A DNA stretch of 64,000 nt. Origin: Octopus sinensis (lineage: Eukaryota). Below the pieces are notes generated by a model. It worked only from the letters and a program-made list of their open reading frames with translations, had not been told where the DNA came from and searched no databases. Position 1 is the stretch's first letter; every line of letters begins with the position of its first letter. Shown here one piece after another: positions 14,933-60,820 of the stretch. The stretch lies in contig NC_043007.1 in the NCBI RefSeq assembly GCF_006345805.1, positions 75,082,001 through 75,146,000 of the forward strand, read 5' to 3'. The position numbers and the translations under genes were made by a program.

Positions 14933-14963
<31 letters not shown>

Positions 14964-16826: not shown

Positions 16827-16908
16827 GGTAGTAATGTATATTTGTGAAATAGTTACCAATAAATATATTGTAATCTTTATACCACTAAATGTAAATGTAT
16901 TGTTTCAG

Positions 16909-21858: not shown

Positions 21859-22005
21859 TCATTCCTGTACATTCTGTGGTATTTCACCTTCTCTGTGCTG
21901 GGCAATTTTAACCACTTCTTCTTTGCTGCTCATCTAATTGATGTTGCTATTGGATTCAAAACTTTGAGAACTATTTTGCAATCCGTTACACACAATGGAA
22001 AACAG
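21859..22005 (+). CDS. RyR: RyR exon (S3, S4, S4-S5 linker)
   Basis: ctctag|TCA...CAG|gtaaat; [49 protein letters not shown]. Confidence 0.97.
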
Positions 22006-23294: not shown

Positions 23295-23328
<34 letters not shown>

Positions 23329-24859: not shown

Positions 24860-24991
24860 TTGGTGCTTACTGTGATGTTGACAAGTATTGTTGTATATAT
24901 CTACACAGTCATAGCCTTTAACTTCTTCAGGAAGTTCTATGTCAAAGAAGAGGATGGTCAAGTTGATTACAAATGCCATGACATGGCTACA
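24860..24991 (+). CDS. RyR: RyR exon (S5 and luminal loop)
   Basis: ttgcag|TTG...ACA|gtatgt; [44 protein letters not shown]. Confidence 0.97.
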
Positions 24992-28142: not shown

Positions 28143-28207
28143 GTTTGATCATTGACGCTTTCGGAGAACTGAGAGATCAATTGGAACAAGTAAAAGAAGA
28201 TATGGAG
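28143..28207 (+). CDS. RyR: RyR exon (S6 gate and cytoplasmic extension)
   Basis: ctacag|GT...GAG|gtaaat; [22 protein letters not shown]. Confidence 0.97.
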
Positions 28208-29249: not shown

Positions 29250-29350
29250 TCTAAATGTTTCATCTGTGGTATCGGCAAGGAATTCTTTGATAAAGTTCCG
29301 CATGGTTTCGACACTCATGTAATGAATGAACATAATTTTGCAAATTACAT
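29250..29350 (+). CDS. RyR: RyR exon (CTD zinc site)
   Basis: tttcag|TCT...AT|gtaagt; [33 protein letters not shown]. Confidence 0.97.
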
Positions 29351-30914
29351 GTAAGTATCTTTTTTTGATCACTTTTATTTTTCTTTATTTTTGTGTCATT
29401 ATTTGTATTAACTAAGGTGGCGAGCTGACAGAATTGCTAGCACGCTGAGCAAAATGCTTAGTGGTATTTCATCCATACTTACGTTTCTGAGTTCAAATTC
29501 CACCAAGGTCAACTTTACCTTTCATCCTTTTGGGGTTGATGAAATAAGTACCAGTTGTGCACTTGGGTTGATATAATTGACAAGCCCCCACTCCCCAAAA
29601 AGTTTCAGGCCTTGTGCCAAAAGAAGAAAGGATTATTTCACTAAACTTCAGCTCCAGAAAAAAGCTTCAGTTCCAACCAATACCAGCCCAGGACAATAGA
29701 TTATTGGAATTGTGAAAACATTAAACCAGATGCTTTACATTGCATTCTTAGTTCAAATCCCTTCCATAGCCTACTTAAGTGGTAGACTTAATCCTTTAGC
29801 ATTCACATTACTCTGTCAAATGTGATGCTTATCTATTCACATTATTTTGAATTAATTATGCATTATCTTGTAGGTTTAAGGTTTTCATGAGGTAATAATT
29901 AATTTTTAGAATGACATTGTAGGGTTAGTGTGAGAGGTCAGATTGGGCCAGTTTGAACATAAAACCAGTTGAATATTTGGCCAGATATGGCTGGTGTAAA
30001 TGCTAATGGATTGATCCATCATCAAGTAGGGTATCTTCAGCAGAATTCCCCCTGTTGCAAACAAACATGCCAGGTCTCCTGTTTGAGAACATCTTCCCTT
30101 CTTTTCATTAAACTCAGAAGCCTTGCGTTCAAGAAGATTGCCTTCTCACCTGACTAATGGATAAATAAATTACTTAACCTCTACAAAGACGTTGTGAGCT
30201 CCACAAGGAAATACAGCTGCCTTGCCTGGAATGGTGCAACCTTACATGCACAGATATCTTAGACAGCATAAAAAAAGGCCACCAAACAAATTGATGTGAA
30301 ACCTACCAAATTCTAACACCCTCTCGCAGATGTATTGTCTCTCTTGTTCTACCTCTTCTCCCACTACTATAGGGACTTTTGTTAATTGGTGTTGGCAGCT
30401 CTCATACTGATTCCAGTCAGGTCCATCTAGCAAACTCATCTCTTATAATCTATATTGCAACCACGCAAGGGCGGTGAGCTGGCAGAAACGTTAGCACGCC
30501 AGGCGAAATGCTTAGCAGTATTTTGTCTGTCGCCACATTCTGAGTTCAAATTCCGCCGAGGTCGACTTTGCCTTTCATCCTTTCAGGATTGATTAAATGA
30601 GTACCAGTTATGCACTGGGGTCGATGCAATCGACTTAATCCATTTGTCTGTCTTTGTTTGTCCCCTCTGTGTTTAGCCCATTGTGGATAGTAAAGAAATA
30701 TATATTGCAACCACACCCATCTCCAGGCTTCATTTTAAACACTTTTCTTGATCCTTTCTGTCAGTGGCATAGCTAGAGTGTGTATCACCCAGGGTACCCC
30801 TCAAATTTGCCTCCCCCCCCAACCCACATTGCCAAGCCTATACAGGTTTGCCATTTTCGACAAATGCTTGCTGTTTTCAGTTATAAAAAGAATTCATTTT
30901 TTTTCTTTTGACAG

Positions 30915-30966
30915 GTTCTTCTTAATGCATCTTATTAACAAACCAGACACAGAGTACACTGGACAA
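30915..30966 (+). CDS. RyR: RyR exon
   Basis: gacag|G...CAA|gtaaga; FFLMHLINKPDTEYTGQ. Confidence 0.97.
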
Positions 30967-31926
30967 GTAAGATTTTCTTTTTCCATTTTTATAACATGTT
31001 ACTCTACTTCTCAACTTGATCACACTTTATCTACTCTATATTTGCATCCAGCATGAAAGCAGAGAACAAATAATAGTGATACTATATAACACTATATATA
31101 TATATATATATAGTGAGAGAGAGAGAGAGGAATCTGAGGTTATAAGAGATAATGGTGTCATTGAGACCCAAAGGTGTCAGGTAATGCTGAATAAGTGCTA
31201 TAGACAGATCATAGTTAAGTTCCAGATTTGGTAATTTTGCGAATAAGGGGTTCAACGTTGGTTCTATGTCAGCATGTGTATATAAGAATTTTTTGCGTAA
31301 TAAGATAACAAACCAAGGCTGTGTAGATATTAGAGCATTTATAGATAGAAGGTCTTACAGCTGTTACACACACACATACACACACACACACACTAAGACT
31401 CATACACATGTGCATGCACACACACACACAAATATCATTCCTGGTTCTCCCTGGATTATTTTTCCTGTTTTTTTTTTACTTAATTTTTGAGAGCGGTTGA
31501 GTTCATTTTTAGTATTCTTATTTGTGAGAACAGTCAACCCTATTTCAGATATTCCCATTTTAAAAATCATCTGTGGCTAATTGTTGAGAGGACATTGGTG
31601 TTGCATTGGCCGAGGTTTGTGCTCTCTGAGTGTTCTTGTTAAGTATTGTTTCAGTTAGAAACTAGAAAACTCAAATACAAAAGGGTGTTACTTCTGCCGC
31701 ACCCTGTATATAAAGGTAAAGGTAATGGTTACCTTCCTGACTCATGCCAACTCATAAGGACTGGTTTCCCAGTTTCCATGGTTACTTATTTTTGCCAGCC
31801 GAGTGGACTGGAGCAATGTGAAATGAAGTGATTTGCTCAAGAACACAATGTGTCACTCAGTGCAAGAATCATAACTACAATCTTATGATCATGAGTCCAA
31901 GACCCTAGCCATGCACCTCGACACTG

Positions 31927-33063: not shown

Positions 33064-33232
33064 CGCAGGAGTGGCTGTGTGGTAAGTAGCTTGCTTACCA
33101 ACCACATGGTTCCGGGTTCAGTCCCACTGCGTGGCACCTTGGGCAAGTGTCTTCTACTATAGCCTCGGGCCAACCAAAGCCTTGTGAGTGGATTTGGTAG
33201 ACGGAAACTGAAAGAAGCTCGTCGTATATATG

Positions 33233-33263
<31 letters not shown>

Positions 33264-33486
33264 ATGTATGTTTGTGTGTCTGTGTTTGTCCCCCTAGCAT
33301 TGCATGACAACCGATGCTGGTGTGTTTATGTCCCCGTCACTTAGCGGTTCGGCAAAAGAGACCGATAGAATAAGTACTGGCCTTACAAAGAATAAGTCCC
33401 GGGGTCGAGTTGCTCGATTAAAGGCGGTGCTTCAGCATGGCTGCAGTCAAATGACTGAAACAAGTAAAAGAGTAAAGAGTAAAGAG

Positions 33487-33829: not shown

Positions 33830-34836
33830 CCCTCTATACACAATCATACAAACCCCTTTTTATTTATATATATGTGTGTGTGTTCTATACAATAGTACAT
33901 ATACTGTAAATGGTAATATAGTAATTTATTTCCTTTCTTCAATGACAACCCATTCAGTACTTTACTAGTTTAGAATTTGTGGAGCAGGGAATCAATGGGA
34001 CCTTTCAGCAGATTAAGTGGGATTAAGATAATAGTAGGCCAGGGGCCCACTACGAAATACCTCAAAGTATTTATGAATTTCTGGTCCTTTACATTCTGAT
34101 TTTAAATTCTGCTGATATCAACTTTGTCTTTCATTCTTCTTAAATACTGCAAATAAAATACCAGTCATGTGGTGGGGAGCTCACGTAATTGACTACACCA
34201 AATTGTCCCAAAAATGTGGGCATATGTTAGAAATTAATATTTCTTCAATTATAGACGACAGCAAGCTGGCAAAATCATTAGTGTGTTGGACAAAATGCTT
34301 ATCAGCATTTCCTCTGTCTTCACGTTCTGAGTTCAAATTCTACCAAGAATGACTTTGCCTCTTACCCTTTGGGGTTTGGTAAAATAAATACCAGTTGAGT
34401 ACTGAGTTTGATGTAATAGATTAATCCCCACCCCAAAAATTTCAGGCTTTGTGCTTATAGTAAAAAGAAATATTCTATGAATCATGACATTTCTATCTCT
34501 CTAACCATTAGCCATCTGTTTTTCATGTAAATTATTATATTCTAAAAAGTTAAAAAGAAAACCTCTATGTGTTCCAATGATCTGCAAGAAATAGCAGCCA
34601 GATCTCCCTTAAATCAACCCCTGTTGTCTTAAAAAGGAAGGACACTATAGATAATGAAGTCCTAGATACACTATGTCTAAATAAATGATAGGATGATCGA
34701 GGCTTGAATGTCTTCTCTGCCAGAGTTTATTAGGGGATAGATAACATCAACACAATATTTTAAATATTTCCACATTTTGTATTGTTATAATTATGTCTTA
34801 ACAAATTATGATATCAATTGTTTTGTTATGTTCCAG

Positions 34837-34935
34837 GAAACCTATGTTTGGGAAATGTATCAACAGCGCTGCTGGGACTTTTTCCCAGTTGGTGATTGCT
34901 TTAGGAAACAGTATGAAGATGAAGCTTCTAGCTGA
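34837..34935 (+). CDS. RyR: RyR terminal coding exon
   Basis: ttccag|GAA...TGA; [32 protein letters not shown]. Confidence 0.97.
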
Positions 34936-42204: not shown

Positions 42205-45200
42205 CTCTCTCCTTTATTATATATATATATATCCGAACGTAGCAGATCCTTTGGCGGCTGTTTGGACTCTGACTGATTGGTATTGGCGCAATTTGTCTCT
42301 TACTCTATCACGCCAATATGCTACCTAATCAATCGAAGTCCCTAAATAAGATCACGTGCGACAGTCTGTTCACAATCCAATTTTGAGCCTACTGTTACTT
42401 ATAAATATTCAGCTTCTCCTTGTCTCGAGGTCTTTGGTTCCAGACCTTCTAAGGTTTAGCCACCGACCACATGACACAGCCAGTTCCAGTGACTCCGCCA
42501 GACAACACCCATCCAACAGCATTACAGCGACCTCCATCTTCACCGCGACCATTATGTCTCTCACCGACTTCATCAACAACATCTTTACATACATAGCACC
42601 AGCAACACTGCACAGTTTCAACCGATTTTCGCCAAACTTTACACGCACATTACTTATGTGCCAAGCATGGTCATGCATTATAACGTTTTCCCCAGAGCTC
42701 TTGCTTAAAGCGAGAAACTGTAGAAAAAATGTTTCGCACGGGGTTTTTTTCTCTAAAAAAAACTTTTGCAGTTTTCAACCGATATTCTCCGTTTTCTGTC
42801 TCTAAAGTTTTTGCACTCCGTGTATTTAAATTTACTTTTTCCACATCTGCATTTTGTAATTGAAGCTTCTAAACTCTGAGATAATGCTACCTAAGAAAAG
42901 ACCCCGTATTGGTCGCAAAACCACCCCAGCAGAAGCATCGAAGAGAAGGAGAGCAAATGAATCCTCGCATGAGACTGCACGAAGACATTCACAAAATGCT
43001 GCTTGCACAACCACCGCAAGAGCCATGGAAAGTGAGGAGCTGCTTAGCAGTCGCCAGATCGGAAATGCTTCATTAACAGCTTCAGTACATGCTAACCTGA
43101 GTCAGTCACAGCACATTATTCGTCGTACAAGGGATGCTACAGCAACTGAAGCTGCGCGAGCTGCAGACAACGAAAAACAGCGCGCCATTCGCCATACTAG
43201 GAATGCTGCAGCTGCACGAGGTTCAGAGGACGGAGAACAGTGCCATTCGCCAGAATAGAGATGCTACAGCAACTGCTGCTGCGCGAACTGCAGAGACTGT
43301 ACAAGATCGAAGTAGTAGGCTTGGGAATAATGTTCAGAGAAGAGGTAATGCCCGGGGCATTTCTAAACCCTGCAATTCACAGTGGCTCTTAAAAGCATTC
43401 CACTATGATCCCAATGTCAACTATGCCATCTATCCAGATATTCAGATCGGTGATATGTCATTTACTTGCCAGTTCTGAAACGCCAAAAGATGGTCAGGAG
43501 AAAATTTCGGAATGTGCTGCTCCAACGAGAAGGTCCAATTGCCCGCCTCCTTGAAGATCCACCACAGCCGTTGAAGCTTCTACTTGCAGGTACAACAGCA
43601 GAGTCGAAGTACTTCTTGGATAACATTCGAAAGTACAATTGCGCTTTTCAAATGACCTCTTTTGGGGCAAATATTGTCAGAGAGGATGGATTTATACCCA
43701 CTTTTAAAGTGCAAGGACAGGCGTATCACAGGATTGGATCATTCCAGCCTCTGAAAAATGAAGAACCTCGATTTCTTCAGCTGTACTTTGTTGGGAACTA
43801 CCATCAGCAAGCAAGCAGGCGAAACTCCATTTCACCTGGAGCTCATTCTGCCACTTTAGAAGATGATGCATTTTAGAAACAGCTATGTCCAAAGCTTCAG
43901 GTATGCTTTGGAAACAGAAACTACACCAAATTTTACCGTTGTAATAAACGCTGAGCAAAGACAATCTGGGGAACATGCAGGCTGCTATAATGCACCCACA
44001 TGCAATGGGATTGCTGTTGTCTTCCATGGTGACCAATACAAGAGCAGAGACATTGTTCTCAATCGTTGAGAGAATACAATACAAAGGACCACTGAAACAC
44101 AGAGATCCTACGATGCACTTCAGTATCCCCTTCTCTTTGTACATGGTGAGAACGGTTACCATTTTGGCATTCCAAAGCGTAGCACTAACAATGCTGGAGA
44201 GCAAATCAACAAAACAGTTTCATGCACGGACCGCTTTGACATGCAACAACTGCTTCAACCACCTACACAGGTCGCAGGAACTCTACCACCAATTTGCAGT
44301 TGATATGAATGCAAAAATGGAGTCTGAGAGATTGGGGTTCATAAAAAAAAATCAGAAAAGGCTGCGTTGTGACAGCTACATCCATCTTCGAAGTAGTATC
44401 GACAATGATGCAGCTCCCAGAAACATTGGACAAGTTTGCATTCTTCTATCTACTTTTACAGGAGGTCCCCGCTATATGCATGAGAGGACCCAGAGTACAA
44501 TGACATATGTGCGGCATTATGGGAGACCTGATCTATTTATCGCCTTCATATGCAATCCTTAGTGGCAGTAGTGAACTCTTTGCGGGTCAAAAACCCAAAG
44601 ACAAGCATGTCCTCATGGCCAGAGTCTTTCGGTTAAAGTTGATTAAACTGTTGGACTTCATCATAAAAAGTCAGGTACTTGGACATGTGAAATGTGACAT
44701 GTACACTGTGGAATGGCAAAAAAGAGGCACAAATGCAGTTGCCCGGCATAGAAGTAGGCTTCAGTGATGGAGTCTACAAGCTTGTGTTGATCGATATAGA
44801 GGACAAGATTGTTTCAATGGGTGGAAATGCTCTTCCTACATATGGTTTGCCCCAAACACTACGGGAAACTTCGAATTCTCTTCCCACATACATTCTTCAA
44901 GAACCGTCCTACGACATTGAGGCTCTCACGAGATATGTCATCCAAACTGAGCCTAAATTGCTTCCTGACCAGCAACGCTCTTACCGCATTATTGTTGACT
45001 GTGTGCTCTACCGAAGAGGAGGCATATTTTTCCTGGATGCTCCAGGGGGGGGGGACAGGAAAAACATACGTAACAAAGCTTCTCCTAGCCAAAGTTAGAC
45101 AGCACAAGGGCATCGCATTAGATATTGCGGAGATGGGGTTGCGGAGATTTTACTGCCTGGTGGCAGGACAGCACATTCTACATTTAAGCTTCCTCTCTAT

Positions 45201-46567
45201 ATGACAAGATTTGACATTCCTACTTGTCACATCAGTAAGAGCTCAGATAATGGAAAAGTGCTGAGAAGGTGTCAGCTCGTTGTGTTGGATGAATGCACCA
45301 TGACACACAAAGGAGCTCATGAAGCTTTAGACATCAGGGACTGTCAGGATCCCAAGGTGGGGGGAGGTGTCACACTTTTATTACCTGGGAATTTCAGGCA
45401 AACTCTTACAGTAATTCCCAAAGGAACCAGGGCGGATGAAGTCCGAGTGTGTCTTAAGTCCTCTCCATTATGACACCAGGTCACAATATTGCGTCTTAAC
45501 ACTAACATGAGAGCTCAACTGTACGGTGACCAACTGTCGGCAAAATTTGCTGAAGATATTTTGACTCCTGGTGAAGGCAAGATGCCTCTGGATACACGTG
45601 AAGAAATTCCACTCAGACCAGTTTGCACCATCATTAGTACCGTTAATGATCTCAAATCTGTTGTGTTTCCCAATCTGAGGGAAAATTACAAGAATCTCAG
45701 TTGGCTATGCGAAAAGGCAATACTTGCTCAAAAAAAAACCACTAATAATATCAATAATATCAGTGTCAATAATATTGACAATGTCAATATATATATCAAT
45801 TGTCAATAATATCCATGTCAGTAATATCAATGAGCAGCTGCTGCAGTTCATGCCTGGAATTCCGCAAGTCTTCAAGTCAGTTGATACAACACCAAATCCC
45901 GCACAGAATTCTTCAATTCATTGGAACCTCCGGGTCTCCCTTCCCACAGATTGGGACTGAAAGTGGGCATTCCAATAATGCTGCTGAAGAATTTGGATCC
46001 TCTGAGACTGTTCAACGCGGCACGACTGGTGGTGAAGAAGATGGTGCCACGTGTTATTGAGGCGGTCATTCTGTTCGTGTGAGTTTTGCGATGTCGAGCA
46101 ACAAATCGCAAGGGCAAACACTCTCTGTGGCAGGACTTCACCTGGAGGGTTCTTTAGCAGCGCTGCCGAAGTTGGCAAGTTTGTACAGTTCTGTATGCTT
46201 TTACTGAAAAATTGACTGTATTGTACGTTTTAGAAATTTTAGATTTCAATATTCTTTCTTTTTAACGGCGGTGCATCAGCATGGCCGCAGCTCTGAGCTG
46301 AAACTAAAAAAAAAAATGTATTTTCATCAATTTCAAGTCATTATACACCCATATATTTCAGATTTTCTAAGAAAAACCGTATTTTTCTCTATTTTTCGCG
46401 GTTGTGACATGTTTCAAAAATATTTTGTACATTTTTTGTGAATTTTGGTACGTTTTGGCATGGAATTCTGTACGTTTTTCAAAAGCACTTCGCGACGCTG
46501 GTCGTTAGACAAGAAAATAAGTATTCAAAGCGTTCACACCCCGAGCAATGCCGGGTACCTCAGCTAG
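42205..46567 (+). mobile_element. Decayed Helitron (RepHel pseudogene)
   Basis: Frameshifted motifs NIRKYNCAFQMTSFG, FKVQGQAYHRIGS, YVRHYGRPDLF, VEWQKRG, LDAPGG/GTGKT, VVLDECTM, GNFRQ, RLNTNMR, FAMSSNKSQGQTL; 3' CCCGAGCAATGCCGGG...CTAG|T at 46564-46567; 5' end approximate. Confidence 0.92.
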
Positions 46568-48956: not shown

Positions 48957-49660
48957 TCAGTAGTTTTATTTTTATAGCGTGCTTTCACTTCACTACAGAG
49001 CGCAGCTCTGTGTGCCTTGGGTATGTGCTGTGATTTGTTGTGATGCTCTGATGGTTATTGTGTGGAAAGTGTTCTGCGTAGGATGTGTGCAGTGCCTAGT
49101 AGTGCAATTTTCTGTATGTTATATGTGTTTGTAAGTCCTGGTGTTTTTGTTATGTATTTGTCTGAATATTTTTTTATCATGCCTAATGCACCTACTATGA
49201 TAGGAATTGTTTCTGTTTTCAGATTCCACATTCTAGTTACCTCTATTTCCAGGTCTTTGTATTTTGAGAGTTTCTCCATTTCTTTTAGAGACACGTTGTC
49301 ATCAGCCGGTATTGATACATCAATTAGAAAGCATTTTTTTCCTCCATGGTCTCTGACAACTATATCTGGTCTGTTGGCCTTAATTTCTCTGTCTGTGTGT
49401 ATCGGCATATCCCAGAGTATGGTTGCTTTCTCGTTTTCTGTGACCTTTTCTGGTGTGTGCCTATACCATCTTTTTTCTGTTGTTATTCCATAATGTTGGC
49501 ATAGCTTCCAATGTATGTAGGTTCCAACTCTGTCATGTCTGTGAATATATTCCTTCTTAGCCAGGACTGGGCAGCTAGAGATAATATGATTTATTGTTTC
49601 TTGTCCATCTCCACATATTCTGCAGTTACTTGTAATATTTCTTTTCATTACATGTTTTTG
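48957..49660 (-). mobile_element. 5'-truncated REL-endonuclease LINE (R4/Dong-like)
   Basis: Open 197-aa frame: CRICGDGQETINHIISSC (CCHC knuckle), RHD, NRPDIVV...IDVSIP...EKLSKY (REL), IIVGALG; (TAT)n on both sides. Confidence 0.88.
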
Positions 49661-49723: not shown

Positions 49724-51988
49724 TGAGAATACAAAATTAAAATCTGGCAACTTTTGCACAGTGATAATTATGGCTCACTCTGCCGTGAATCTTATGATAG
49801 TAAATGCGTGACAATCTCTGTATTGGTATTTCATATTCTCTCCCTTCACATCTCACTCAATATATATATATATATTTGAATTGTTTTTCCGTTTGAAAGC
49901 GATCGAGTAATTTTTTAGTATTCTCGTTTGTGAGAGCAGTCGATTTTATTTCAGATATTCTCATCTTAAAAATCATCTCCGGTTAATCAGTGAGAGGATG
50001 TTGGTGTTGCGTTGGCGGAGGTTTGCGCTCTCTGTGTGCTGTTGTTATTCTTACTTTAAAAGCGGTGAGCTGGCAAGCTGGACGAAATGCTTAGCGGTAT
50101 TTCGTCTGCCGTTACGTTCTGAGTTCAAATTCCGCCGAGGTCGACTTTGCCTTTCATCCTTTCGGGGTCAATTAAATAAGTACCAGTTATGCACTGGGGT
50201 CGATGGAATCGACTTAATCCGTTTGTCTCTCCTTGTTTGTCCTCTCTGTGTTTAGCCCCTTATGGGTAGTAAAAAAATAGGTATTTCGTCTGCCACTACG
50301 TTTTGAGTTCAAACTCCGCCGAGGTCGACTTTACCTTTCATCCTTTCGGGATCGATTAAATAAGTACCAGTTGCGCACTGGGGTTGATATAATCGACTTA
50401 ATCTGTTTGTCTGTCATTGTTTGTCCTCTCTGTGTTTAGCCCCTTGTGGGTTGTAAAGAAATAGGTATTTCGCCCGTCGCTACGTTCTGAGTTCAAATTC
50501 CGCCGAGATCGACTTTGCCTTTCATCGGGGTCGATAAATTAAGTACCGGTTACGTACTGGGGTTGATCTAATCGACTAGCTCCGTCCCCGCAAATTTCAG
50601 GCCTTGCACCTTTAGTAGAAATGATTATTATTCTTAGTTTAGTGTCTTTTGATTGAAAACCCCCTCAGCTTGTGACCTCTTCAACGACTCTCCATCCCAT
50701 GTGTCTCCTATTCTGTTTAGTTCATTCTGTGTTTCTGTAAACGGTTATTTCTTTTATTCTTTTTACTTGTTTCAGTCATTGGGCTGCGGCCATGCTAGGT
50801 TGCCGTCTTGAAGAATTTTAGTCCAACGAATGGATCCCAGTACTTTCTGTTTAAGCTTGGTATTTATTCTATCGATCACTTTCGCCGATGAGCGGTACTG
50901 CCTCCCAGGGGGCATTGGAAAGATTCAGCGTGGGGACGTTGAAGAAAAGTGGGGCAGTAATGGGTTAACTAAAAGGGGCCGATGAATGTAAATACAACAA
51001 ATTAATGGGTCGTTTAGGTCAGATTTTATTTATGAAATACAATTGTTTTGAATTTGCTGCAGAAAGTAGCCTACATTTGTGGTGGTGAGTGGAGGAGGGG
51101 ACTAGGAATGTGGCTTTGGTGTCAAGAGGGCGGTAGCACGAAGCTGTTTGGAAACCACGGATGTAAATGAATAGACGGGATTCAATTTCCCAGTATTAAT
51201 GTTTATGGCAAGTGATAATCATCATCATCAACATTACTCTTCATGTAAAAATTTGTAGCAGGGAGCGCCGTCAAGCGGTACAAGGTTCTCGACCACATCA
51301 TTCCGAATTCCGTTTCGAAAACCAGTTGAAAGTGCTTTGTTGTGCGGATACTCTATTCGGTGTGAAAGCAAGTGACCTAATGATTAGGCTGTTGCTCATA
51401 TGATCGTAAGATTTTGGCTTCGATTTCAGGACTAGGCGATGCTTTGTGTTCTTGAACAAAACGCTTCATTTCACATTGCTCCAATCCACTCTGCTATAAG
51501 TGAGTAACCCTGTCATGAACTTGTATTCCGTTCAGAGTGAATGTTGTGACTCCACTCATTCACCATGGGAACTGAGTAGCTGTCCCCCATGAGTCCTAAG
51601 ACTTGAGACAGTAATGGCCAGAAGACTTACTTTATTTTTTGCTTTTACTGTATTTGGAAAATATATGAACACCTCAAATTTATTTATTTCTCCCAATAGA
51701 TCTGGAATTTCGAGCTAAAGTATTTATGCTCGTGTGAAAAATATATACTCTTTTACTCTTTTACTTGTTTCAGTCATTTGACTGCGGCCATGCTGGAGCA
51801 ACGCCTTTAGTTGAACAAATCGACCCCAGGACTTATTCTTTGTAAGCCTAGTACTTATTCTATCGATCTCTTTTGCCGAACCGCTAAGTTACGAGGACGC
51901 AAACACACCAGCATCGGTTGTCAAGTGATGTTGGGGTGTGTGACATACACAGCTACACAAACATGTACACACACATACATACATATAT

Positions 51989-52094
<106 letters not shown>

Positions 52095-52614
52095 GACACG
52101 CTTCTTTCAGTTTCCGTTTACCAAATCCACTCAAAAGGCTTTGGTCGGCCCGAGGCTATAGTAGAAGACACTTGCCCAAGGTACCACGCAGTGGGACTGA
52201 ATCCGAAACCATGTGGTTGGTAAGCAAGCTACTTACCACACAGCCACTCCTGCGCCTATATGGACATATAAAAGAATAAAGGAACACACGAAATGAAGGT
52301 TTCTTTGCCCTTGTGTTAGTTAATCAAAATTTGTATCAGAATTGGAATATCCCTTAAGTAAAGAAATCATTAGCATATTTTAAATCTTAAAACTTGTATT
52401 TATTGTCTCTTAATTTAGGAGAGAAGAAAATAAGATGCTGTGGTATTCATATCTTTTCTAAATAAAGAATGTAAAGTGAAACGGTGTCATCTTGAAATCG
52501 AAACAGGAAGATGACATATTAACCAAATAAAATGTTTAAATATTCGACTGGACTTAGAGAAATTATTATTCTCTGTTGTACTGAGTTAAATAGTTGTCTT
52601 TGATTACATTGTAC

Positions 52615-53543: not shown

Positions 53544-56394
53544 TTATGTATATAAAATTATAACCGTTATTTTCATGTCATTCATTTTATAATAGGATAC
53601 GATTTTAAGAAGTTCGAGGTCCAATTTTCTTGTTGCGTCGTCTAGGCTTCAAAAGAAAATGAAAACTTCAAACCGAATAGTAACTAAATTTTATAAATAC
53701 ATTACACACAAACACATGCGCTCGCACGCGCGCGTAATAATAAGGATTTAACAATGATCCTTATTATAACGCACGCGCGCGTAATAATAAGGATTTAACA
53801 ATGATCCTTATTATAATAATGATTGCGCGTATATCCGTATGGTATGATATTTAGTCTTTAACAAAAGAATGGACTTTCTGTGGGTTTTTAGCCCTATACG
53901 TCCATAGGAGATTCTTTCGCGAGGCGAATATCGACGTTCTATAACTTTCTACAGTGTAGCTATATTAAGTAAAATAAACAGAATGTTATTCTGAACTAAT
54001 TTTGCTTCCGTCGCTAATAACGAATTTTTAGCCTGCTGGCCGGTTATTTGCGACACCAATGATTTGTTAATTATTGTTTTTCTATATTAATAGAGGCTAA
54101 ATTTGTCTAAGCATACAGCTGCAAGTAGATACTTGCTACTGGTGGTACTCAAAGAAGCAGGTATCTTAGTTTAACAACTCTGCTGCTATTACTAGACGCT
54201 TTTTATCTGATAGCGATATTATTTTGTGGTTTTTAACACAAAAAGGCTTTCTCTAGACGAATACTGCATTTTTCTGCCTTTTAACAGAGTATCCACGTAC
54301 ATCGTGCAGCTTATTCAGTTGGTATTTTGACGTAGAAATTGTCATCAAAATATGAAAGAAAGTTTACAGAATGTCCATAAATTACCTCTTCAATTTGAGA
54401 AATTCAGAAGAGAAAAAGAAGGGAAAATAATAACTCATAGGCGCAGCAGTGGCTGTGTGGTACGTAGCTTGCTTACCAACCACATGGTTCCGGGTTCAGT
54501 CCCACTGCGTGGCATCTTGGGCAATTGTCTTCTGCTATAGCCCCGGGCCGACCAATGCCTTGTGAGTGGATTTGGTAGACGGAAATGAAAGAAGCCTGTC
54601 GAACATATGTATATATATGTATGTGTGTGTATATGTTTGTGTGTCTGTGTTTGTGCCCCTAGCATTGCTTGACAACCGATGCTGGTGTGTTTACGTCCCC
54701 GTCACTTAGCGGTTCGGCAAAAGAGACTGGGCTTACAAAGAATAAGTCCCGGGATCGATTTGCTCGACTAAAGGCGGTGCTCCAGCATGGCCGTAGTCAA
54801 ATGACTGAAACAAGTAAAAGAGTAAAAGAGAGTCAGAGTTCATTGGAAAGTACAGAAGGACAAATTAAGTTTTATTAGAAGCATCAGAACACTTCTTAGT
54901 GGGTTTCACTGGCTGCCTAGAAATTGGGAGATAGCTTTCAACTTTGATAGATACAATAAACTGTGGAAGTTGTAAAGATAATTTATGAATATCCTGTAAT
55001 ATTGTAAAAACAAACTAAACCTTTACTCGTTAACTTCCTGCCGTCAAGAGCAGACATCCACAGATAAATAAAATCCTTCTTGGCGAGAACTCCATAGAAC
55101 AAATTTTCATTTTGTAAAGCTTGCAAAATAAAAACACAAAAAAAAAAACATTGAATCACAGAGCAAAAAAGGAAATATATTTGATTTCGATGAAATTGAA
55201 TGATAATAATCCTTTCTATTATAGGCACAAGGCCTGAAATTTTGGGGTGGGGGAATAGTCAATTGACCCAGTGCTCAACTGATATTTATTTTATCAATTC
55301 CGAAAGGATGAAAGGTAAAATCGACCTCGGCGAAATAAGAACCCAGAGCGTAAAGACGGACGAAATGCCGCTAAGATTGTTTGGAACATCTCTCACCGAA
55401 CAAAAGTGAATAGCTGTTATAGCAAGGAAGAATAGCCAGCAGTGTGGAAAAAAATTGAACTGCAGGTCGTTGAACAACTGTATGGTATGAGGTCTAGAGA
55501 TGTGGTCGCACTGCATTTTCAAAAGCCGGTTTCATCCATGAAAGTTCATACGCCAAGAGATTGAGGGTAAAGGTACGGGTAAAGACTCCGCTTCGGTCAC
55601 GAATGACCATGGGATTGCACCTAGAAAGTTCCCCTCCGAGTCCGGGGAAGCTTGTTTGTGGAAGACCAGCAGTCGCCCATTCATGCCAGTATCCTATCTC
55701 CACGCCATTAATATTATCCAAAGCACCAGTGACGTCGCAACTCATTTCTACAGTTGAGTGAACTGGAGCAACGTGAAATAAAGTACCTTGCTCAAGAACA
55801 CAACACACAGCCCGGTCCGGGAATCGAACTTACAACCACATGATTGTAAGCCCGATTATCTGACCACTGAGCATGCATCTTCACTGAGAGCTTGAAGAGC
55901 GGTAATATATGCGTTGTGGGAGGTCGACTTTGCCTTTCATCCTTTCGAGGTCGATAAATTAAGTACCAGTTCCGTACTGGGATCGATCTAATCGACTGAC
56001 CCCTCCACAAAAATTTCGGGTTTTGTGCCTAGAGTAGAAAAGAATATATGTAGAGGGGAGTTGTTGGAAGTGACAAGAAGTAGGGCTTTATTACATAGAA
56101 TGAATGATGGTCAAAACATAATCGAACCGTTTATATAAATATTGTGTTGAGTAAAAACCGAAGTATGTCAACAAAGTAAATAATGTATTTTTTCAATAAA
56201 TGAAATCGTTACTAACGATCAGTAAACGTTGAAATCTCATGGAACCTTGAAAGCCTGTTTCAATGAATTCGATCAAATTTGATAACTTACAACAAATTGT
56301 CTACATGGCATCACTTCGAGTTAATTCCCCGATTAAAAACAAAAGAAAGCAGAGAGAGAAGCAACTGCACTGAAACGGCTTTACTCTTCTTTTC

Positions 56395-56554
56395 TTTTTT
56401 TTTTTTTTACTTGTTTCAGTCATTTGACTGTGGCCATGCTGGAGCACCGCCTTTAGTCGAACAAATCGACCCCAGGACTTATTCTTTGTAAGCCTAGTAC
56501 TTGTTCTAACGTAAACACACCAGCATCGGTTGTCAAGCAATGTTGGTGAGACAA

Positions 56555-56591
<37 letters not shown>

Positions 56592-56616
56592 ATATATATA
56601 TATATAATATATATAT

Positions 56617-56650
<34 letters not shown>
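56395..56650 (-). mobile_element. SINE family B, 3' half (split by the ribozyme array)
   Basis: Tail sequence cttgtttcagtcatttgactgtggcc...gcaatgttggtgagacaaacacac followed by (TA)n. Confidence 0.8.
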
Positions 56651-56921
56651 ATAATTAATTAATAAGGGTGAGAGAATTAGATACTAATTTAATAGTATGT
56701 CTATTCAACACAAGTGGCCTAGTGCTCCGAGAAACCTGGATAATTATATTTTATAATATATTATATATTTTTACAAAATAAATATAGAGAGTGGTCACTA
56801 TATGGCTCACTCTAGCACCAGTTAATCCAAAAGGTTTCAACCACAAAAATACATGTTTCCCATGAAAGTCAGTACGATTGTTAGCTCACACGGACAGGGC
56901 AAATAAAAAATAACAAAAATA

Positions 56922-57017
56922 CAGATTATTTTGGGACAATTGTTTCGCTATTAATGAATTAAATGTAATTTTACTTACAAAAAAATCCACTTGTAACTCG
57001 TCAGCCAAAACTATCTG
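56922..57017 (-). ncRNA. Type I hammerhead ribozyme, unit 1
   Basis: CAGAUAGUUUUGG-CUGACGA-GUUA...UAGC-GAAA-C-AAUU-G-UC/CCAAAAUAAUCUG. Confidence 0.82.
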
Positions 57018-57451
57018 GATGAAATCCACTCAATCACACGCCAGATTTTACCATAACGATAAATACACGTGTGGTTCAATTGATTACATCCGACGTTATA
57101 ATTCAAATGCCCCAACTAACAGCGCGCCAAACTTTCACCGGAAACAAATACTGCATTAGAAATAAATGCAGCATAATTATAATTAATTAATAAGGGTGAG
57201 AGAATTAGATACTAATTTAATAGTATGTCTATTCAACACCAAGTGGCCTAGTGCTCCGAGAAACTGGATATTATATTTTATAATATATTATAATATTTTT
57301 ACAAAATAAATATAAGAGAGTGGTCACTATATGGCTCACCTCTAGCAACAGTTAATCCAAAAGGTTTCAACCACAAAAATACATGTTTCCCATGAAAGTC
57401 AGTACGATTGTTAGCTCACACGGACAGGGCAAATAAAAAATAACAAAAATA

Positions 57452-57547
57452 CAGATTATTTTGGGACAATTGTTTCGCTATTAATGAATTAAATGTAATT
57501 TTACTTACAAAAAAATCCACTTGTAACTCGTCAGCCAAAACTATCTG
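57452..57547 (-). ncRNA. Type I hammerhead ribozyme, unit 2
   Basis: Identical to unit 1 as read. Confidence 0.82.
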
Positions 57548-57980
57548 GATGAAATCCACTCAATCACACGCCAGATTTTACCATAACGATAAATACACGT
57601 GTGGTTCAATTGATTACATCCGACGTTATAATTCAAATGCCCCAACTACAGCGCGCCAAACTTTCACGAAAACAAATACTGCATTTAGAAATAAATGCAG
57701 CATAATTATAATTAATTAATAAGGGTGAGAGAATTAGATACTAATTTAATAGTATGTCTATTCAACACCAAGTGGCCTAGTGCTCCGAGAAACCTGGATA
57801 ATTATATTTTATAATATATTATAATATTTTTACAAAATAAATATAAGAGAGTGGTCACTATATGGCTCACTCTAGCCCAGTTAATCCAAAAGGTTTCAAC
57901 CACAAAAATACATGTTTCCCATGAAAGTCAGTACGATTGTTAGCTCACACGGACAGGGCAAATAAAAAATAACAAAAATA

Positions 57981-58075
57981 CAGATTTTTTTGGACAATTG
58001 TTTCGCTATTAATGAATTAAATGTAATTTTACTTACAAAAAAATCCACTTGTAGCTCGTCAGCCAAAACTATCTG
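57981..58075 (-). ncRNA. Type I hammerhead ribozyme, unit 3 (altered 3' strand of stem I)
   Basis: Core intact (CUGACGA-GCUA...UAGC-GAAA-CAAUUGUC) but followed by CAAAAAAAUCUG. Confidence 0.65.
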
Positions 58076-58826
58076 GATGAAATCCACTCAATCACACGCC
58101 AGATTTTACCATAACGATAAATACACGTGTGGTTCAATTGATTACATCCGACGTTATAATTCAAATGCCCCAACTAACAGCGCGCCAAACTTTCACGGAA
58201 AACAAATACTGCATTTAGAAATAAATGCAGCATAATTATAATTAATTAATAAGGGTGAGAGAATTAGATACTAATTTAATAGTATGTCTATTCAACACCA
58301 AGTGGCCTAGTGCTCCGAGAAACCTGGATAATTTTTTGTAAGTAAAATTACATTTAATTCATTAATAGCGAAACAATTGTCCAAAAATAATCTGTATTTG
58401 TTATTTTTTATTTGCCCTGTCCGTGTGAGCTAACAATCGTACTGACTTTCATGGAAAACATGTATTTTTGTGGTTGAAACCTTTTGGATTAACTGGTGCT
58501 AAAGTGAGCCATATAGTGACCACTCTCTTATATTTATTTTGTAAAAATTTATAATATATTATAAAATATAATTATCCAGGTTTCTCGGAGCACTAGGCCA
58601 CTTGGTGTTGAATAGACATACTATTAAATTAGTATCTAATTCTCTCACCCTTATTAATAATTATAATTATGCTGCATTTATTTCTAAATGCAGTATTTGT
58701 TTTCCGTGAAAGTTTGGCGCGCTGTTAGTTGGGGCATTTGAATTATAACGTCGGATGTAATCAATTGAACCACACGTGTATTTATCGTTATGGTAAAATC
58801 TGGCGTGTGATTGAGTGGATTTCATC

Positions 58827-58922
58827 CAGATAGTTTTGGCTGACGAGCTACAAGTGGATTTTTTTGTAAGTAAAATTACATTTAATTCATTAATAGCGAA
58901 ACAATTGTCCCAAAATAATCTG
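58827..58922 (+). ncRNA. Type I hammerhead ribozyme, inverted unit
   Basis: Stem I 58827-58839/58910-58922; CTGACGA 58840-58846; stem II GCTA/TAGC; GAAA 58898-58901; GTC 58907-58909. Confidence 0.85.
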
Positions 58923-59358
58923 TATTTTTGTTATTTTTTATTTGCCCTGTCCGTGTGAGCTAACAATCGTACTGACTTTCATGGGAAATGTATTTTTGTG
59001 GTTGAAACCTTTTGGATTAACTGGTGCTAGAGTGAGCCATATAGTGACCACTCTCTTATATTTATTTTGTAAAAATATTATAATATATTATAAAATATAA
59101 TTATCCAGGTTTCTCGGAGCACTAGGCCACTTGGTGTTGAATAGACATACTATTAAATTAGTATCTAATTCTCTCACCCTTATTAATTAATTATAATTAT
59201 GCTGCATTTATTTCTAAATGCAGTATTTGTTTTCCGTGAAAGTTTGGCGCGCGCTGTTAGTTGGGGCATTTGAATTATAACGTCGGATGTAATCAATTGA
59301 ACCACACGTGTATTTATCGTTATGGTAAAATCTGGCGTGTGATTGAGTGGATTTCATC

Positions 59359-59453
59359 CAGATAGTTTTGGCTGACGAGCTACAAGTGGATTTTTTTGTA
59401 AGTAAAATTACATTTAATTCATTAATAGCGAAACAATGTCCCAAAATAATCTG
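59359..59453 (+). ncRNA. Type I hammerhead ribozyme, last inverted unit (stem III loop 1 nt shorter)
   Basis: CTGACGA at 59372-59378; GAAA-C-AAT-G-TC/CCAAAATAATCTG. Confidence 0.72.
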
Positions 59454-59599
59454 TATTTTTGTTTTTTTTTATTTGCCCTGTCCGTGTGAGCTAACAATCG
59501 TACTGACTTTCATGGGAAACATGTATTTTTGTGGTTGAAACCTTTTGGATTACTGGTGCTAGAGTGAGCCATATAGTGACCACCTCTTATATTTAATTT

Positions 59600-59778
59600 T
59601 ATATATATATATATATATTACAGCGGGCTTCTTCCAGTTTCCGTCTACCAAATCCACTCACAAGGCTCTGGTCGGCCCGTGGCTATAGTAGAAGATACTT
59701 GACCATGGTGTCACGCAGTAGGACTGAACCCGGAACCATGTGGTTGGTAAGCAATCAACTTACCACACAGCCACTCCT
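59600..59778 (-). mobile_element. SINE family B, 5' half (split by the ribozyme array)
   Basis: Minus strand aggagtggctgtgtggtaag...gaagaagcccgctg followed by (TA)n. Confidence 0.8.
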
Positions 59779-60820
59779 AGACAGTTGTTCTGGAGACTTT
59801 TGTAGGGTATATAATTTTCTTATTATTGTGTCTATTCTGCATAGTATTAACTTAAAGCTTCGTCAATTCCACTTAGACGACATTTAACTAAACTGGTGAG
59901 ACGCAGGCGTGACTGTGAGCTTAGAAGTTTTCTTCCCAACAACATGGTTCTGGAATCAGTCTCACTGCGTTACACCTTGGGCAAGTGTCTTTCACCATAG
60001 CTTCGAGTTGACCAAAGCTTTGTGAGTAGATTTGGTCGATAGAAACTGAAACCCGTCGTGTGTGTGTGTGTATGCGTGTGTGTGTGTGTGTGTGCGTGTG
60101 TGCGTGTATGCGTACGTACGTGTGCGCACATACATACATACATACATACATACATACATGCATACATATATATGTGGAGGCGCGTGGCTTAGTGGTTAGG
60201 GTGTCAGCATCATGATCGTAAGATTGTGGTTTCGATTCCTGGACCGGGCGATGCGTTGTGTTCTTGAGCAAAACACTTCATTTCACGTTGCTCCAGTCCA
60301 CTCAGCTGGCAAAAATGAGTAACGTTGCGATGGACTGGCGTCCCATCCAGCTGGGGAACACATACACCATGGAAACCGGGAAACCGGGCCCATGAGCCTG
60401 GCTAGGCTTCAAAAGGGCGCATTTATTATTATTATACATATATATATATATACATATATATATAATATGGTGTGTGTGTTGTCCCGCACCACCGTTTGAC
60501 AACTGGTGTTGATGCATTTACTTCCCCGTAACTTAGCGGTTCGACACAAGAGACTGATGGAATAAGTACCAGACTAGGTTTCACTGGCGGTGCCTTAACA
60601 TAGCCGCAGTCATTCGGAAATATACCATAAACATTAATAGAATGTAATTTTCTCGAAAGAGTAATTCGCACTGCCACAAATTGTACACAAACCGCACCTA
60701 TAAAACCAGTCGCACAAGGAAATAGAAGTATAGCTGAAGACCCAGTAATTAGTATTGCCACAGATTGCACATAAACCACACCCATAAAACTACTCACACA
60801 ACGATATAAAAATATAGCTG

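What the first reader, a model, noticed from the sequence alone, without database searches (positions are those of the whole stretch)
56650..59600. Tandem ~530-nt repeat carrying type I hammerhead ribozymes: candidate cephalopod retrozyme / ribozyme-circRNA element
Seen in the sequence: all five complete units contain CUGACGA...GAAA-C-AAUU-GUC (the last has AAU instead of AAUU). In units 1, 2 and both inverted units this core is flanked by a 13-position stem I (CAGAUAGUUUUGG / CCAAAAUAAUCUG, one A.A mismatch, one G.U); unit 3 has an altered 3' strand. Stem II is long and structured: GCUA/UAGC, then AGUGGAUU/AAUUCAUU, then UGUAA/UUACA. There is no real ORF. Established knowledge: minimal type I hammerheads with a one-pair, palindromic-loop stem III are typical of Penelope-like elements and metazoan non-LTR retrozymes, cleave as dimers, and give circular RNA monomers. 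Inference: this is a young non-autonomous retrozyme whose multimeric transcript would cut at GUC|CC into ~530-nt monomers, which is long for this class. I am not aware of this family being described, but cannot check.
Basis: partly seen in the sequence, partly recalled or inferred. Interest (0 to 1): 0.93.

Follow-up and report, generated by a model that had tools for sequence, protein, structure and literature searches.

The report
Hammerhead-ribozyme retrozyme repeat array
A 2.9-kb block of 530-bp non-coding repeats, each carrying an intact-looking self-cleaving hammerhead RNA motif, has been inserted into a (TA)n microsatellite; it is a new family of an already known kind of mobile element (a non-LTR "retrozyme"), laid down head-to-head as Penelope-like retrotransposons are.

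Summary
Window 56654-59597 contains 5.55 copies of a 528-531-bp unit (32% GC, no real ORF). About 3.2 units lie on the minus strand and 2.4 on the plus strand, meeting head-to-head at 58333/58334. There are five complete type I hammerhead motifs and one truncated one. All invariant core nucleotides are present, helix I has 13 positions, and helix II is a long three-part stem. Helix III is 2 bp with a palindromic AAUU loop. A hammerhead descriptor finds four of them and none in 200 shuffled windows. Rfam scores them 30-31 bits, just under its cut-off of 34.

New here: the flanks are the two halves of a dispersed ~400-bp repeat, and at least seven other copies in the window are uninterrupted. 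The array is therefore an insertion into that repeat's internal (TA)n tract. Tandem units, an inverted 5'-truncated partner and an AT-rich target together match the published signature of Penelope-like-element retrotransposition.

Best reading: a non-autonomous non-LTR retrozyme. Cleavage, circular RNA, genomic copy number and host identity could not be tested. The 530-nt size is not exceptional, because published families span 51-972 bp. It is a new member of a known kind, of moderate interest.

The parts
56400..56560 (.). Left half of the target: a dispersed ~400-bp SINE-like repeat
   Evidence: blastn finds at least 10 homologous copies in the window. In at least 7 of them this half is directly followed by the right half, across only a microsatellite.
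56573..56653 (.). Left part of the split (TA)n target microsatellite
   Evidence: TRF: period 2, 42.5 copies. Paralogous copies carry (CA)n(TA)n at this place.
56654..58333 (-). Minus-strand array: 1680 nt, 3.17 units. Its 3' end, at unit column ~289, abuts (TA)n. Its 5' end is truncated at unit column ~193.
   Evidence: Unit alignment and coordinates; direct repeats spaced 528-530 bp.
56922..57017 (-). Hammerhead 1, complete, with the GUUA stem II variant. Predicted cleavage after 56935 on the minus strand.
   Evidence: Rfam RF00163, 31.0 bits, E = 5.7e-5; descriptor hit; sequence.
57452..57547 (-). Hammerhead 2, complete, with the GUUA variant. Predicted cleavage after 57465 on the minus strand.
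   Evidence: Rfam 31.0 bits; descriptor hit.
57981..58075 (-). Hammerhead 3: intact core, but the helix I 3' strand is damaged (CAAAAAAAUCUG).
   Evidence: Core found; fails the helix I test of the descriptor; sequence.
58326..58335 (.). Head-to-head junction of the two 5'-truncated arrays, with imperfect microhomology (TGGATAATT against TGGATTTTT; TT overlap).
   Evidence: The unit phases differ on the two sides (column ~193 against ~482), so the arms are not mirror images.
58334..59597 (+). Plus-strand array: 1264 nt, 2.38 units. Its 5' end is truncated inside hammerhead helix II. Its 3' end, at unit column ~160, abuts (TA)n.
58334..58394 (+). Truncated hammerhead: only the 3' part of helix II, GAAAC-AAUU-GUC and an altered helix I 3' strand. 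It has no CUGACGA.
58827..58922 (+). Hammerhead 5, complete, with the GCUA variant. Predicted cleavage at 58909|58910.
   Evidence: Rfam 30.0 bits, E = 5.6e-6; descriptor hit; fold -28.3 kcal/mol, z = -5.1.
59359..59453 (+). Hammerhead 6: complete core, but loop 3 is AAU, which destroys the ACAAUUGU palindrome. Predicted cleavage at 59440|59441.
   Evidence: The self-duplex drops from -6.4 to -1.6 kcal/mol.
59598..59620 (.). Right part of the split (TA)n target microsatellite
   Evidence: Sequence.
59618..59790 (.). Right half of the target SINE-like repeat
   Evidence: Ten other homologous copies in the window; in at least 7 of them it is contiguous with the left half.

Best explanation
This is one insertion of a non-autonomous, non-coding retroelement of the metazoan non-LTR retrozyme kind. 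Its unit is ~530 nt and carries one type I hammerhead ribozyme.

Shown by the sequence:
- Each unit has a hammerhead with every invariant nucleotide: C3-A9 as CUGACGA, G10.1-C11.1, G12-A14, A15.1-U16.1 and C17.
- Helix I is open and 13 positions long. Helix II is a 51-nt three-part stem. Helix III is 2 bp, and with its AAUU loop it makes the 8-nt palindrome ACAAUUGU.
- The block interrupts the (TA)n tract of a dispersed repeat whose other copies are uninterrupted.
- It consists of two tandem arrays joined 5' end to 5' end, each with its 3' end against (TA)n.

Inferred from established knowledge:
- A multimeric transcript of either array pairs neighbouring hammerheads through the palindrome into a double hammerhead and cuts after GUC. 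This releases ~530-nt monomers with 5'-OH and 2',3'-cyclic phosphate ends.
- A host RtcB-type ligase closes these monomers into a branched, highly paired circular RNA. In the circle the lone hammerhead, with its 2-bp helix III, is poorly active.
- A reverse transcriptase supplied in trans copies the circle or multimer for more than one turn, primed from both 3' ends of a break in AT-rich DNA. It is most likely that of a Penelope-like element, whose protein cuts and extends both strands at AT-rich sites.
- The two cDNAs are joined at a short microhomology, which gives the head-to-head tandem arrays.

From this locus at most about three full monomers could be released.
For: Motif:
- five complete cores;
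- Rfam Hammerhead_1 at 30-31 bits, E = 5.6e-6 to 5.7e-5, and no other ribozyme family on either strand;
- descriptor 4 hits against 0 in 200 shuffles;
- hammerhead fold z = -5.1;
- the only shared variant, C/U at position 10.2, keeps pairing with G.

Dimer mode: the domain-swapped double hammerhead is -55.2 kcal/mol against -44.0 for two single active folds. Short palindromic helix III acting as a dimer is the published rule (PMC4209133; PMC7229834).

Retrozyme features:
- tandem, 32% GC;
- no coding capacity;
- circular monomer 64-69% paired, linear fold z = -5.2;
- meets the criterion of at least 2 consecutive complete hammerheads;
- lies ~21.7 kb beyond the last ryanodine-receptor coding exon, so probably intergenic.

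Insertion: the flanks are two halves of one repeat, with at least 7 empty paralogous sites.

Penelope-like architecture: partial tandems plus an inverted 5'-truncated copy at the 5' end, and a (TA)n bias, are described for PLEs (PMC8557442). The PLE protein cleaves and extends both strands at AT-rich DNA (PMC11167929). Retrozymes are related to PLE pseudo-LTRs in Xenopus.
Against: - Only one locus was seen. No other copy occurs in the window, and none could be found elsewhere, so mobility as a family is unproven.
- No target-site duplication can be read in a microsatellite.
- No RT or GIY-YIG ORF is in the window, so the partner is unknown.
- The two 3' ends lie at different unit positions (columns ~160 and ~289), whereas PLE reverse transcription in vitro starts at one defined internal site.
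- No 30-40-bp PLE 'tail' is evident.
- One shared variant (U at 10.2 in two adjacent units) is not expected from a single circular template.
- Rfam's gathering score is not reached.
- Five near-identical copies give no real covariation.
- The opposite strand also folds well (z = -4.8), so fold stability is not strand-specific evidence.
Confidence: 0.72

Rival explanations
1. A hammerhead-bearing minisatellite or satellite that grew in place by DNA-level processes (slippage, unequal crossing-over, fold-back replication), without RNA-mediated mobility today. The hammerhead would be a relic.
For: Only one locus was seen. One variant is shared by two adjacent units, as unequal crossing-over would give. 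Satellite birth from PLE ends followed by unequal crossover is discussed in the 2026 preprint.
Against: The block interrupts a repeat whose paralogues are uninterrupted, so at least the founding event was an insertion. A single inversion of a direct array is excluded, because the outer end of the minus array is unit column ~289, not ~481. All core nucleotides are intact in all five copies.
Confidence: 0.12
2. The array is real, but its head-to-head arrangement is an assembly or read chimera, for example a long-read fold-back artefact.
For: Complex PLE-type structures are known to trouble assemblies. 21 of 33 variable columns are 1-2-nt indels, which may point to noisy long-read consensus.
Against: The arms are not mirror images, since the unit phase is ~193 on one side and ~482 on the other. 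Private variants are not shared between arms. The two outer flanks are the matching halves of one repeat in the correct order and orientation.
Confidence: 0.07
3. An integrated cDNA of an exogenous viroid-like or satellite circular RNA replicon, not a genomic retroelement family.
For: The element has a ~530-nt unit, is non-coding and highly paired, and carries a hammerhead. More-than-unit tandem copies are expected from copying a circle.
Against: There is a ribozyme in one polarity only. The type I hammerhead with a short palindromic helix III is the metazoan genomic type. AT richness matches the host window, 32% against 36% GC.
Confidence: 0.04
4. A hammerhead-like motif without catalytic activity, either chance or decayed, in an ordinary repeat.
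For: It falls below Rfam's gathering score. Helix II is atypically long. Some PLE hammerheads cleave poorly, or only with protein.
Against: 0 of 200 shuffles give any hit. Every invariant position and G10.1-C11.1 is kept in five copies, while the rest of the unit carries 33 variable columns. The deficit against Rfam comes from a 39-nt insertion in loop 2.
Confidence: 0.05

Closest known systems
Metazoan non-LTR retrozymes (Cervera and de la Pena 2020, PMC7229834; Li, Clavereau and Pollet 2026 preprint, 10.64898/2026.07.22.740005)
   Same: Type I hammerhead in every unit of a short tandem repeat; low GC; no ORF, LTR, PBS or PPT; highly self-paired monomer; short palindromic helix III that implies dimeric cleavage; probably intergenic location.
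   Different: The unit of 528-531 bp lies above the 170-400 nt of the 2020 description, though inside the 51-972 bp of the 2026 survey. Helix II is a 51-nt three-part stem instead of about 4 bp plus a loop. Expression, circles and copy number are unknown here. The host lineage was not covered in those papers.
Penelope-like elements and their pseudo-LTR hammerheads (PMC4209133, PMC8557442, PMC11167929)
   Same: Insertion architecture of partial tandems with an inverted 5'-truncated copy at the 5' end; AT-rich or (TA)n target; a hammerhead in the repeated part.
   Different: There is no RT/GIY-YIG ORF. The hammerhead is of the canonical type, not the 'minimal' PLE type. No tail is evident, and the two 3' ends lie at different unit positions.
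Hammerhead satellites: newt satellite 2, Schistosoma Sm-alpha, and the Dolichopoda cave-cricket pDo500 (~500 bp). The last is recalled from memory (Rojas et al. 2000) and was not checked here.
   Same: [quoted passage not shown]
   Different: Those are large, abundant arrays. Here there are 5.5 units at a defined insertion site, and abundance is unknown.
Plant LTR retrozymes (PMC4918200)
   Same: Non-autonomous, hammerhead-processed, with 600-1000-nt circular RNA intermediates.
   Different: The plant elements have type III hammerheads in LTRs, PBS and PPT, high GC, and are mobilised by Ty3/Gypsy elements.
L1 twin priming (Ostertag and Kazazian 2001; recalled from memory, not checked here)
   Same: Both ends of a target break prime cDNA on one RNA, giving an inverted, 5'-truncated pair joined at microhomology.
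   Different: Here both arms are longer than one unit (tandem), the target is (TA)n, and there is no poly(A).

Membership tests
Hammerhead ribozyme, type I (Rfam RF00163) | Invariant core: C3 U4 G5 A6 N7 G8 A9, G12 A13 A14, A15.1-U16.1, H17 | tested here: met
   CUGACGA ... GAAA ... GUC in five copies.
Hammerhead ribozyme, type I (Rfam RF00163) | Three helices around the core, with helix I open and helices II and III closed; G10.1-C11.1 | tested here: met
   Folds; Rfam alignment over model positions 1-45.
Hammerhead ribozyme, type I (Rfam RF00163) | Score at or above the curated gathering threshold (34 bits) | tested here: not met
   30.0-31.0 bits. The deficit is due to a 39-nt insertion in loop 2.
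Hammerhead ribozyme, type I (Rfam RF00163) | Helices supported by covariation | tested here: inconclusive
   Five near-identical copies. The only change in a helix is C-G to U-G at position 10.2.
Hammerhead ribozyme, type I (Rfam RF00163) | Site-specific self-cleavage | not testable with these tools
   Needs in vitro transcription.
Metazoan non-LTR retrozyme | Tandem repeat with at least two consecutive units, each carrying a complete type I hammerhead | tested here: met
   Three consecutive on the minus strand and two on the plus strand; criterion taken.
Metazoan non-LTR retrozyme | Unit size | tested here: inconclusive
   528-531 bp is outside the 150-450 bp / 170-400 nt of the 2020 paper and inside the 51-972 bp of the 2026 survey.
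Metazoan non-LTR retrozyme | Low GC; no ORF, LTR, PBS or PPT | tested here: met
   GC 32%. Longest ORF 81 aa, with no Pfam hit for the array's ORFs of 70 aa or more. PBS and PPT were not searched for specifically.
Metazoan non-LTR retrozyme | Highly self-paired monomer | tested here: met
   64-69% paired as a circle; -144.7 kcal/mol, z = -5.2.
Metazoan non-LTR retrozyme | Multiple dispersed genomic copies | not testable with these tools
   No host genome is available. Scans of viral, metagenome and prokaryote collections and of the protein collection found nothing related.
Metazoan non-LTR retrozyme | Expressed as linear and circular monomer RNA | not testable with these tools
   No transcriptome access.
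Penelope-like element (autonomous) | ORF with a telomerase-like RT and a GIY-YIG endonuclease | tested here: not met
   No RVT or GIY-YIG family in any of the 150 longest ORFs (>=70 aa) of the window.
Penelope-like element (insertion signature only) | Partial tandem plus an inverted 5'-truncated copy; AT-rich or (TA)n target | tested here: met
   compared.
Penelope-like element (insertion signature only) | 30-40-bp tail; a single defined internal RT start site | tested here: inconclusive
   No tail is recognisable. The two 3' ends fall at unit columns ~160 and ~289, both merging into (TA)n.
PLE 'minimal' hammerhead | No helix III, helix II of 6-8 bp, helix I of 4-5 bp, an unpaired nucleotide between A9 and G10.1 | tested here: not met
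   Helix III is present, there is no extra nucleotide, and helix I has 6 + 5 Watson-Crick pairs.
Viroid-like or deltavirus-like circular RNA replicon | Ribozymes in both polarities | tested here: not met
   Only one strand per unit carries a ribozyme.

The most novel reading that the evidence does not exclude
The family might be more than a passive PLE parasite. One possibility is a lineage-specific long retrozyme whose elaborated 51-nt helix II and ~430-nt body carry a function of their own, such as recruiting a reverse transcriptase or ligase. Another is that its head-to-head arrays yield ~1.2-kb hairpin RNAs that feed small-RNA pathways. A third is an endogenised copy of an exogenous viroid-like circular RNA of a marine invertebrate.
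Probability: 0.06. Interest if true: 0.75.

Novelty: new member of a known kind. Interest (0 to 1): 0.36.

Why it matters
Retrozymes are thought to spread through hammerhead-processed circular RNAs copied by Penelope-like reverse transcriptases. The link to those elements has so far been argued from co-occurrence and pseudo-LTR similarity in vertebrates, and the 2026 preprint states that invertebrates were not examined.

This locus is a clean natural example in an invertebrate-type genome. It shows a more-than-unit, two-armed, head-to-head insertion into a (TA)n tract, with empty paralogous sites for comparison. That is the product expected if both strands of an AT-rich break prime reverse transcription, as the purified PLE protein does in vitro.

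It also shows that a perfectly formed hammerhead with a long helix II falls below Rfam's threshold (30-31 against 34 bits). Such a motif is therefore invisible to routine ncRNA annotation, so counts such as the 235 Hammerhead_1 loci reported for the giant squid may be underestimates.

Beyond that it is an ordinary member of a known class.

Tried and rejected
**Searches that found nothing**
- Rfam at gathering thresholds on the whole window gave no hit. The whole-window E-value mode gave only microsatellite-driven miRNA pseudo-hits, and its filters lost the hammerheads.
- A metagenome scan with CTGACGAG-N35-65-CGAAACAATTGTC returned 5 loci. All are chance matches in GC-rich contigs without helices I or II.
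- Family-specific patterns found 0 matches in viral and in prokaryotic genome collections.
- I searched the 5.8-billion-protein collection with spurious ORFs of the repeat (81-aa antisense, 47-aa sense), hoping to reach other copies in Logan assemblies. Nothing was found. The negative is uninformative: the closest relative of the window's ryanodine-receptor exon there is only 91% identical in protein and 77.6% in DNA, with no intron alignment. The host and its close kin are therefore not in that collection.

**Host identity**
- I could not establish it. Contig records carry only run accessions.

**Other features looked for**
- ARAGORN finds no tRNA-like part.
- There is no PLE ORF in the window.

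**Ideas rejected**
- Fold energy as strand-specific evidence. The hammerhead strand folds at -144.7 and the opposite strand at -107.4 kcal/mol, but the shuffles differ likewise, so the z-scores are -5.2 and -4.8.
- A single inversion of a direct array, which the unit phases at the ends exclude.
- A fold-back read artefact, because the arms are not mirror images and do not share private variants.
- TRF as a detector, since its 500-bp period limit hides the array.
Full report
**1. What is there**

Window 56654-59597 (2944 bp, 32% GC against 36% for the window) consists of copies of one 528-531-bp unit.
- The repeat finder reports direct families spaced 528-532 bp and inverted arms that are 97-100% complementary.
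- TRF missed the array only because its longest period is 500.
- Cutting the sequence at the predicted ribozyme sites and aligning the pieces gives two arrays. The minus-strand array, 56654-58333, is 1680 nt or 3.17 units. The plus-strand array, 58334-59597, is 1264 nt or 2.38 units.
- Full units are 97.9-99.6% identical.
- Of 33 variable columns, 21 are 1-2-nt indels. All but one variant are private to a single unit.
- No other copy exists in the 64-kb window.
- There is no coding capacity. The longest ORF is 81 aa, and none of the five array ORFs of 70 aa or more hits Pfam.

**2. The hammerheads**

Five complete cores are present: minus 56935-57004, 57465-57534 and 57993-58062, and plus 58840-58909 and 59372-59440. 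A sixth copy at 58334-58381 is only the 3' half, cut by the junction.

Written out, each reads CAGAUAGUUUUGG-CUGACGA-[51-nt helix II]-GAAA-C-AAUU-G-UC|CCAAAAUAAUCUG.
- Every invariant position is present: C3-A9, G10.1-C11.1, G12-A14, A15.1-U16.1 and C17.
- Helix I, counted from the core, has six Watson-Crick pairs, then G.U and A.A, then five more pairs.
- Helix II has 4 bp, a 2x2 internal loop, 8 bp (two of them G.U), an internal loop, then 5 bp closed by 6 nt.
- Helix III is 2 bp (A-U, C-G) with the loop AAUU, so ACAAUUGU is an 8-nt palindrome.
- Helix I is the open one, which makes this type I.

Three copies depart from this form. The third minus-strand copy has a damaged helix I 3' strand. 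The last plus-strand copy has AAU, which breaks the palindrome; its self-duplex falls from -6.4 to -1.6 kcal/mol. The truncated copy lacks CUGACGA.

**3. More than chance**

- A descriptor requiring the core, G10.1-C11.1, a 4-bp helix II, helix III, UH and at least 5 bp of helix I finds four sites, none outside the array. It finds none in 200 dinucleotide shuffles of the window.
- The 104-nt motif folds at -28.3 kcal/mol against -13.6 +/- 2.9 for shuffles, z = -5.1.
- Rfam Hammerhead_1 aligns over its whole model at 31.0 bits for the GUUA variant (E = 5.7e-5) and 30.0 bits for the GCUA variant (E = 5.6e-6).
- This is below the gathering score of 34 because of a 39-nt insertion in loop 2. The default scan therefore reports nothing, and the whole-window E-value scan loses the hits to its filters.
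- No other ribozyme family matches either strand.
- The only variant shared between units is C or U at helix II position 10.2. Both pair with the same G.
- With five near-identical copies, covariation cannot be assessed.

**4. Which kind of hammerhead**

Cervera and de la Pena 2014 (PMC4209133) describe canonical metazoan type I motifs as follows: helix I of 6 bp, helix II of 4 bp, and helix III of 1-2 bp with a 2-4-nt palindromic loop, acting as dimers. They distinguish the 'minimal' PLE motif, which has no helix III, a 6-8-bp helix II, a short helix I and an extra nucleotide before 10.1.

The present motif has the canonical geometry. Non-Watson-Crick elements sit exactly where loops 1 and 2 normally begin. 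Whether they make tertiary contacts is my inference only.

A domain-swapped double hammerhead formed by two copies is predicted at -55.2 kcal/mol against -44.0 for two single active folds. This fits dimeric cleavage in multimers and poor activity in monomers.

**5. The monomer**

- As a circle it is 64-69% paired, and its minimum-energy fold contains helices I and II.
- The linear monomer folds at -144.7 kcal/mol, z = -5.2.
- The opposite strand gives -107.4 kcal/mol, z = -4.8. The stability is therefore real but is not strand-specific evidence.

**6. It is an insertion**

- The left flank (56400-56560) and the right flank (59618-59790) each have about ten homologues in the window.
- In at least seven places the two halves are contiguous, separated only by (CA)n(TA)n. 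Examples are 33469-33067, 12289-11857, 12981-12556, 54819-54445, 23529-23129, 15165-14763 and 51759-52251.
- The array thus splits the internal (TA)n of one copy of a dispersed ~400-bp repeat.
- The remnants of that tract are 56573-56653 on the left and about 59598-59620 on the right.
- A target-site duplication cannot be read in a microsatellite.

**7. Architecture**

- Both arrays have their 3' ends outward, against (TA)n. They end at different unit positions: column ~289 for the minus array and ~160 for the plus array. Both ends fall in A/U-rich stretches.
- The 5' ends meet at 58333/58334. Both are truncated, at column ~193 and at column ~482 inside helix II. The junction shows an imperfect microhomology, TGGATAATT against TGGATTTTT.
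- The arms are not mirror images and do not share private variants. The outer flanks match each other. A fold-back read artefact is therefore unlikely.
- A single inversion of a direct array is excluded, because it would place column ~481 at the outer end.

The published description of PLE insertions is the same. Craig et al. [quoted passage not shown] Frangieh et al. 2024 show that a purified PLE protein cleaves and extends both strands at AT-rich DNA (PMC11167929). Li et al. 2026 relate vertebrate retrozymes to PLE pseudo-LTRs and state that invertebrates were not examined.

**8. Mechanism proposed**

The motif, the insertion and the architecture are shown by the sequence; the rest is inferred.
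- A multimeric transcript is cut after GUC by paired hammerheads into ~530-nt monomers.
- These are ligated by an RtcB-type ligase into circles, as shown for other retrozymes.
- A reverse transcriptase supplied in trans, most likely from a PLE, copies the circle or multimer for more than one turn from both 3' ends of an AT-rich break.
- The two cDNAs are then joined at a microhomology.

Points that do not fit neatly:
- the two different 3' end positions, whereas PLE RT in vitro starts at one internal site;
- no recognisable tail;
- the shared U variant in two adjacent units, which suggests a heterogeneous linear template or a later unit duplication.

**9. Context**

- Ryanodine-receptor C-terminal exons lie on the plus strand from 16.8 to 34.9 kb.
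- The array is ~21.7 kb beyond the last coding exon, so it is probably intergenic.
- No RT or GIY-YIG ORF occurs in the window.

**10. Comparison and novelty**

- Its size exceeds the 170-400 nt of the 2020 description but lies within the 51-972 bp now reported.
- The held literature contains no description of hammerhead repeats or retrozymes in octopus, squid or cuttlefish. The one exception is a count of 235 Rfam Hammerhead_1 loci in the giant squid genome.
- I could not verify that the host is a cephalopod. The closest relative of the ryanodine-receptor exon in the protein collection is 91% identical and 77.6% in DNA, and the records carry no organism names. From memory, the flanking repeats resemble octopus SINE-like repeats; that is a lead, not a test.
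- No related copy could be retrieved from any collection.

**11. Verdict**

It is strengthened by the empty-site and architecture evidence. This is a new family of a known kind, and the size and novelty claims were overstated. Interest is moderate to low (0.36). Its value lies in being a clean natural product of PLE-style two-strand priming, and in showing that long-helix-II hammerheads escape Rfam thresholds.

Noticed in passing
window 16786-17298, 21916-22008, 24869-25003, 28142-28246, 29247-29351, 30916-30990, 34834-34929 (+): C-terminal exons of a ryanodine-receptor gene. They match Pfam RR_TM4-6 and the pore and C-terminal regions, and the last exon ends ...[11 protein letters not shown]. 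An EF-hand ORF is also present somewhere in the window.
   Followed up: partly
window ~42300-45500 (+): A degenerate Helitron: several ORF fragments with Helitron_like_N (E = 3e-23) and PIF1 helicase (E = 2.4e-25) domains, in a region of raised GC (43-44%).
   Followed up: partly
window 49055-49648 (-): An uninterrupted 197-aa ORF with a zf-RVT motif, probably the 3' part of a LINE-type retrotransposon. It is not a Penelope-like element.
   Followed up: partly
window, e.g. 11857-12289, 12556-12981, 14763-15165, 23129-23529, 33067-33469, 51759-52251, 54445-54819: A dispersed ~400-bp SINE-like repeat with an internal (CA)n(TA)n microsatellite of very variable length, reaching (AT)60 at 51975-52093. 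This microsatellite is the target of the retrozyme insertion.
   Followed up: yes
window 58245-58333 with 58570-58658, and the longer arms listed: Because the two arrays are head-to-head, a transcript reading through 58333/58334 would fold into a hairpin with stems of about 1.2 kb and a 236-nt loop. This is a potential source of double-stranded RNA and small RNAs.
   Followed up: no
window 53723-53816: A perfect 47-bp direct duplication. Each copy holds a hairpin (TAATAATAAGGAT...ATCCTTATTATAA) next to a CG-rich stretch. Its nature is unknown.
   Followed up: no
window 50096-50577: A 184-bp unit repeated 2.6 times (87% matches).
   Followed up: no
window 60056-60174, 12005-12085, 6964-7132: The Rfam E-value scan gives sub-threshold 'miRNA' matches (mir-297, mir-466, mir-1277 and others). 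All lie on (GT)n, (ACAT)n or (TA)n microsatellites and are false positives.
   Followed up: yes
window 56935-57004 and 57465-57534 against 57993-58062, 58840-58909, 59372-59440: The only variant shared between units, U instead of C at helix II position 10.2, occurs in two adjacent minus-strand units. This is not expected if all units were copied from one circular template.
   Followed up: partly
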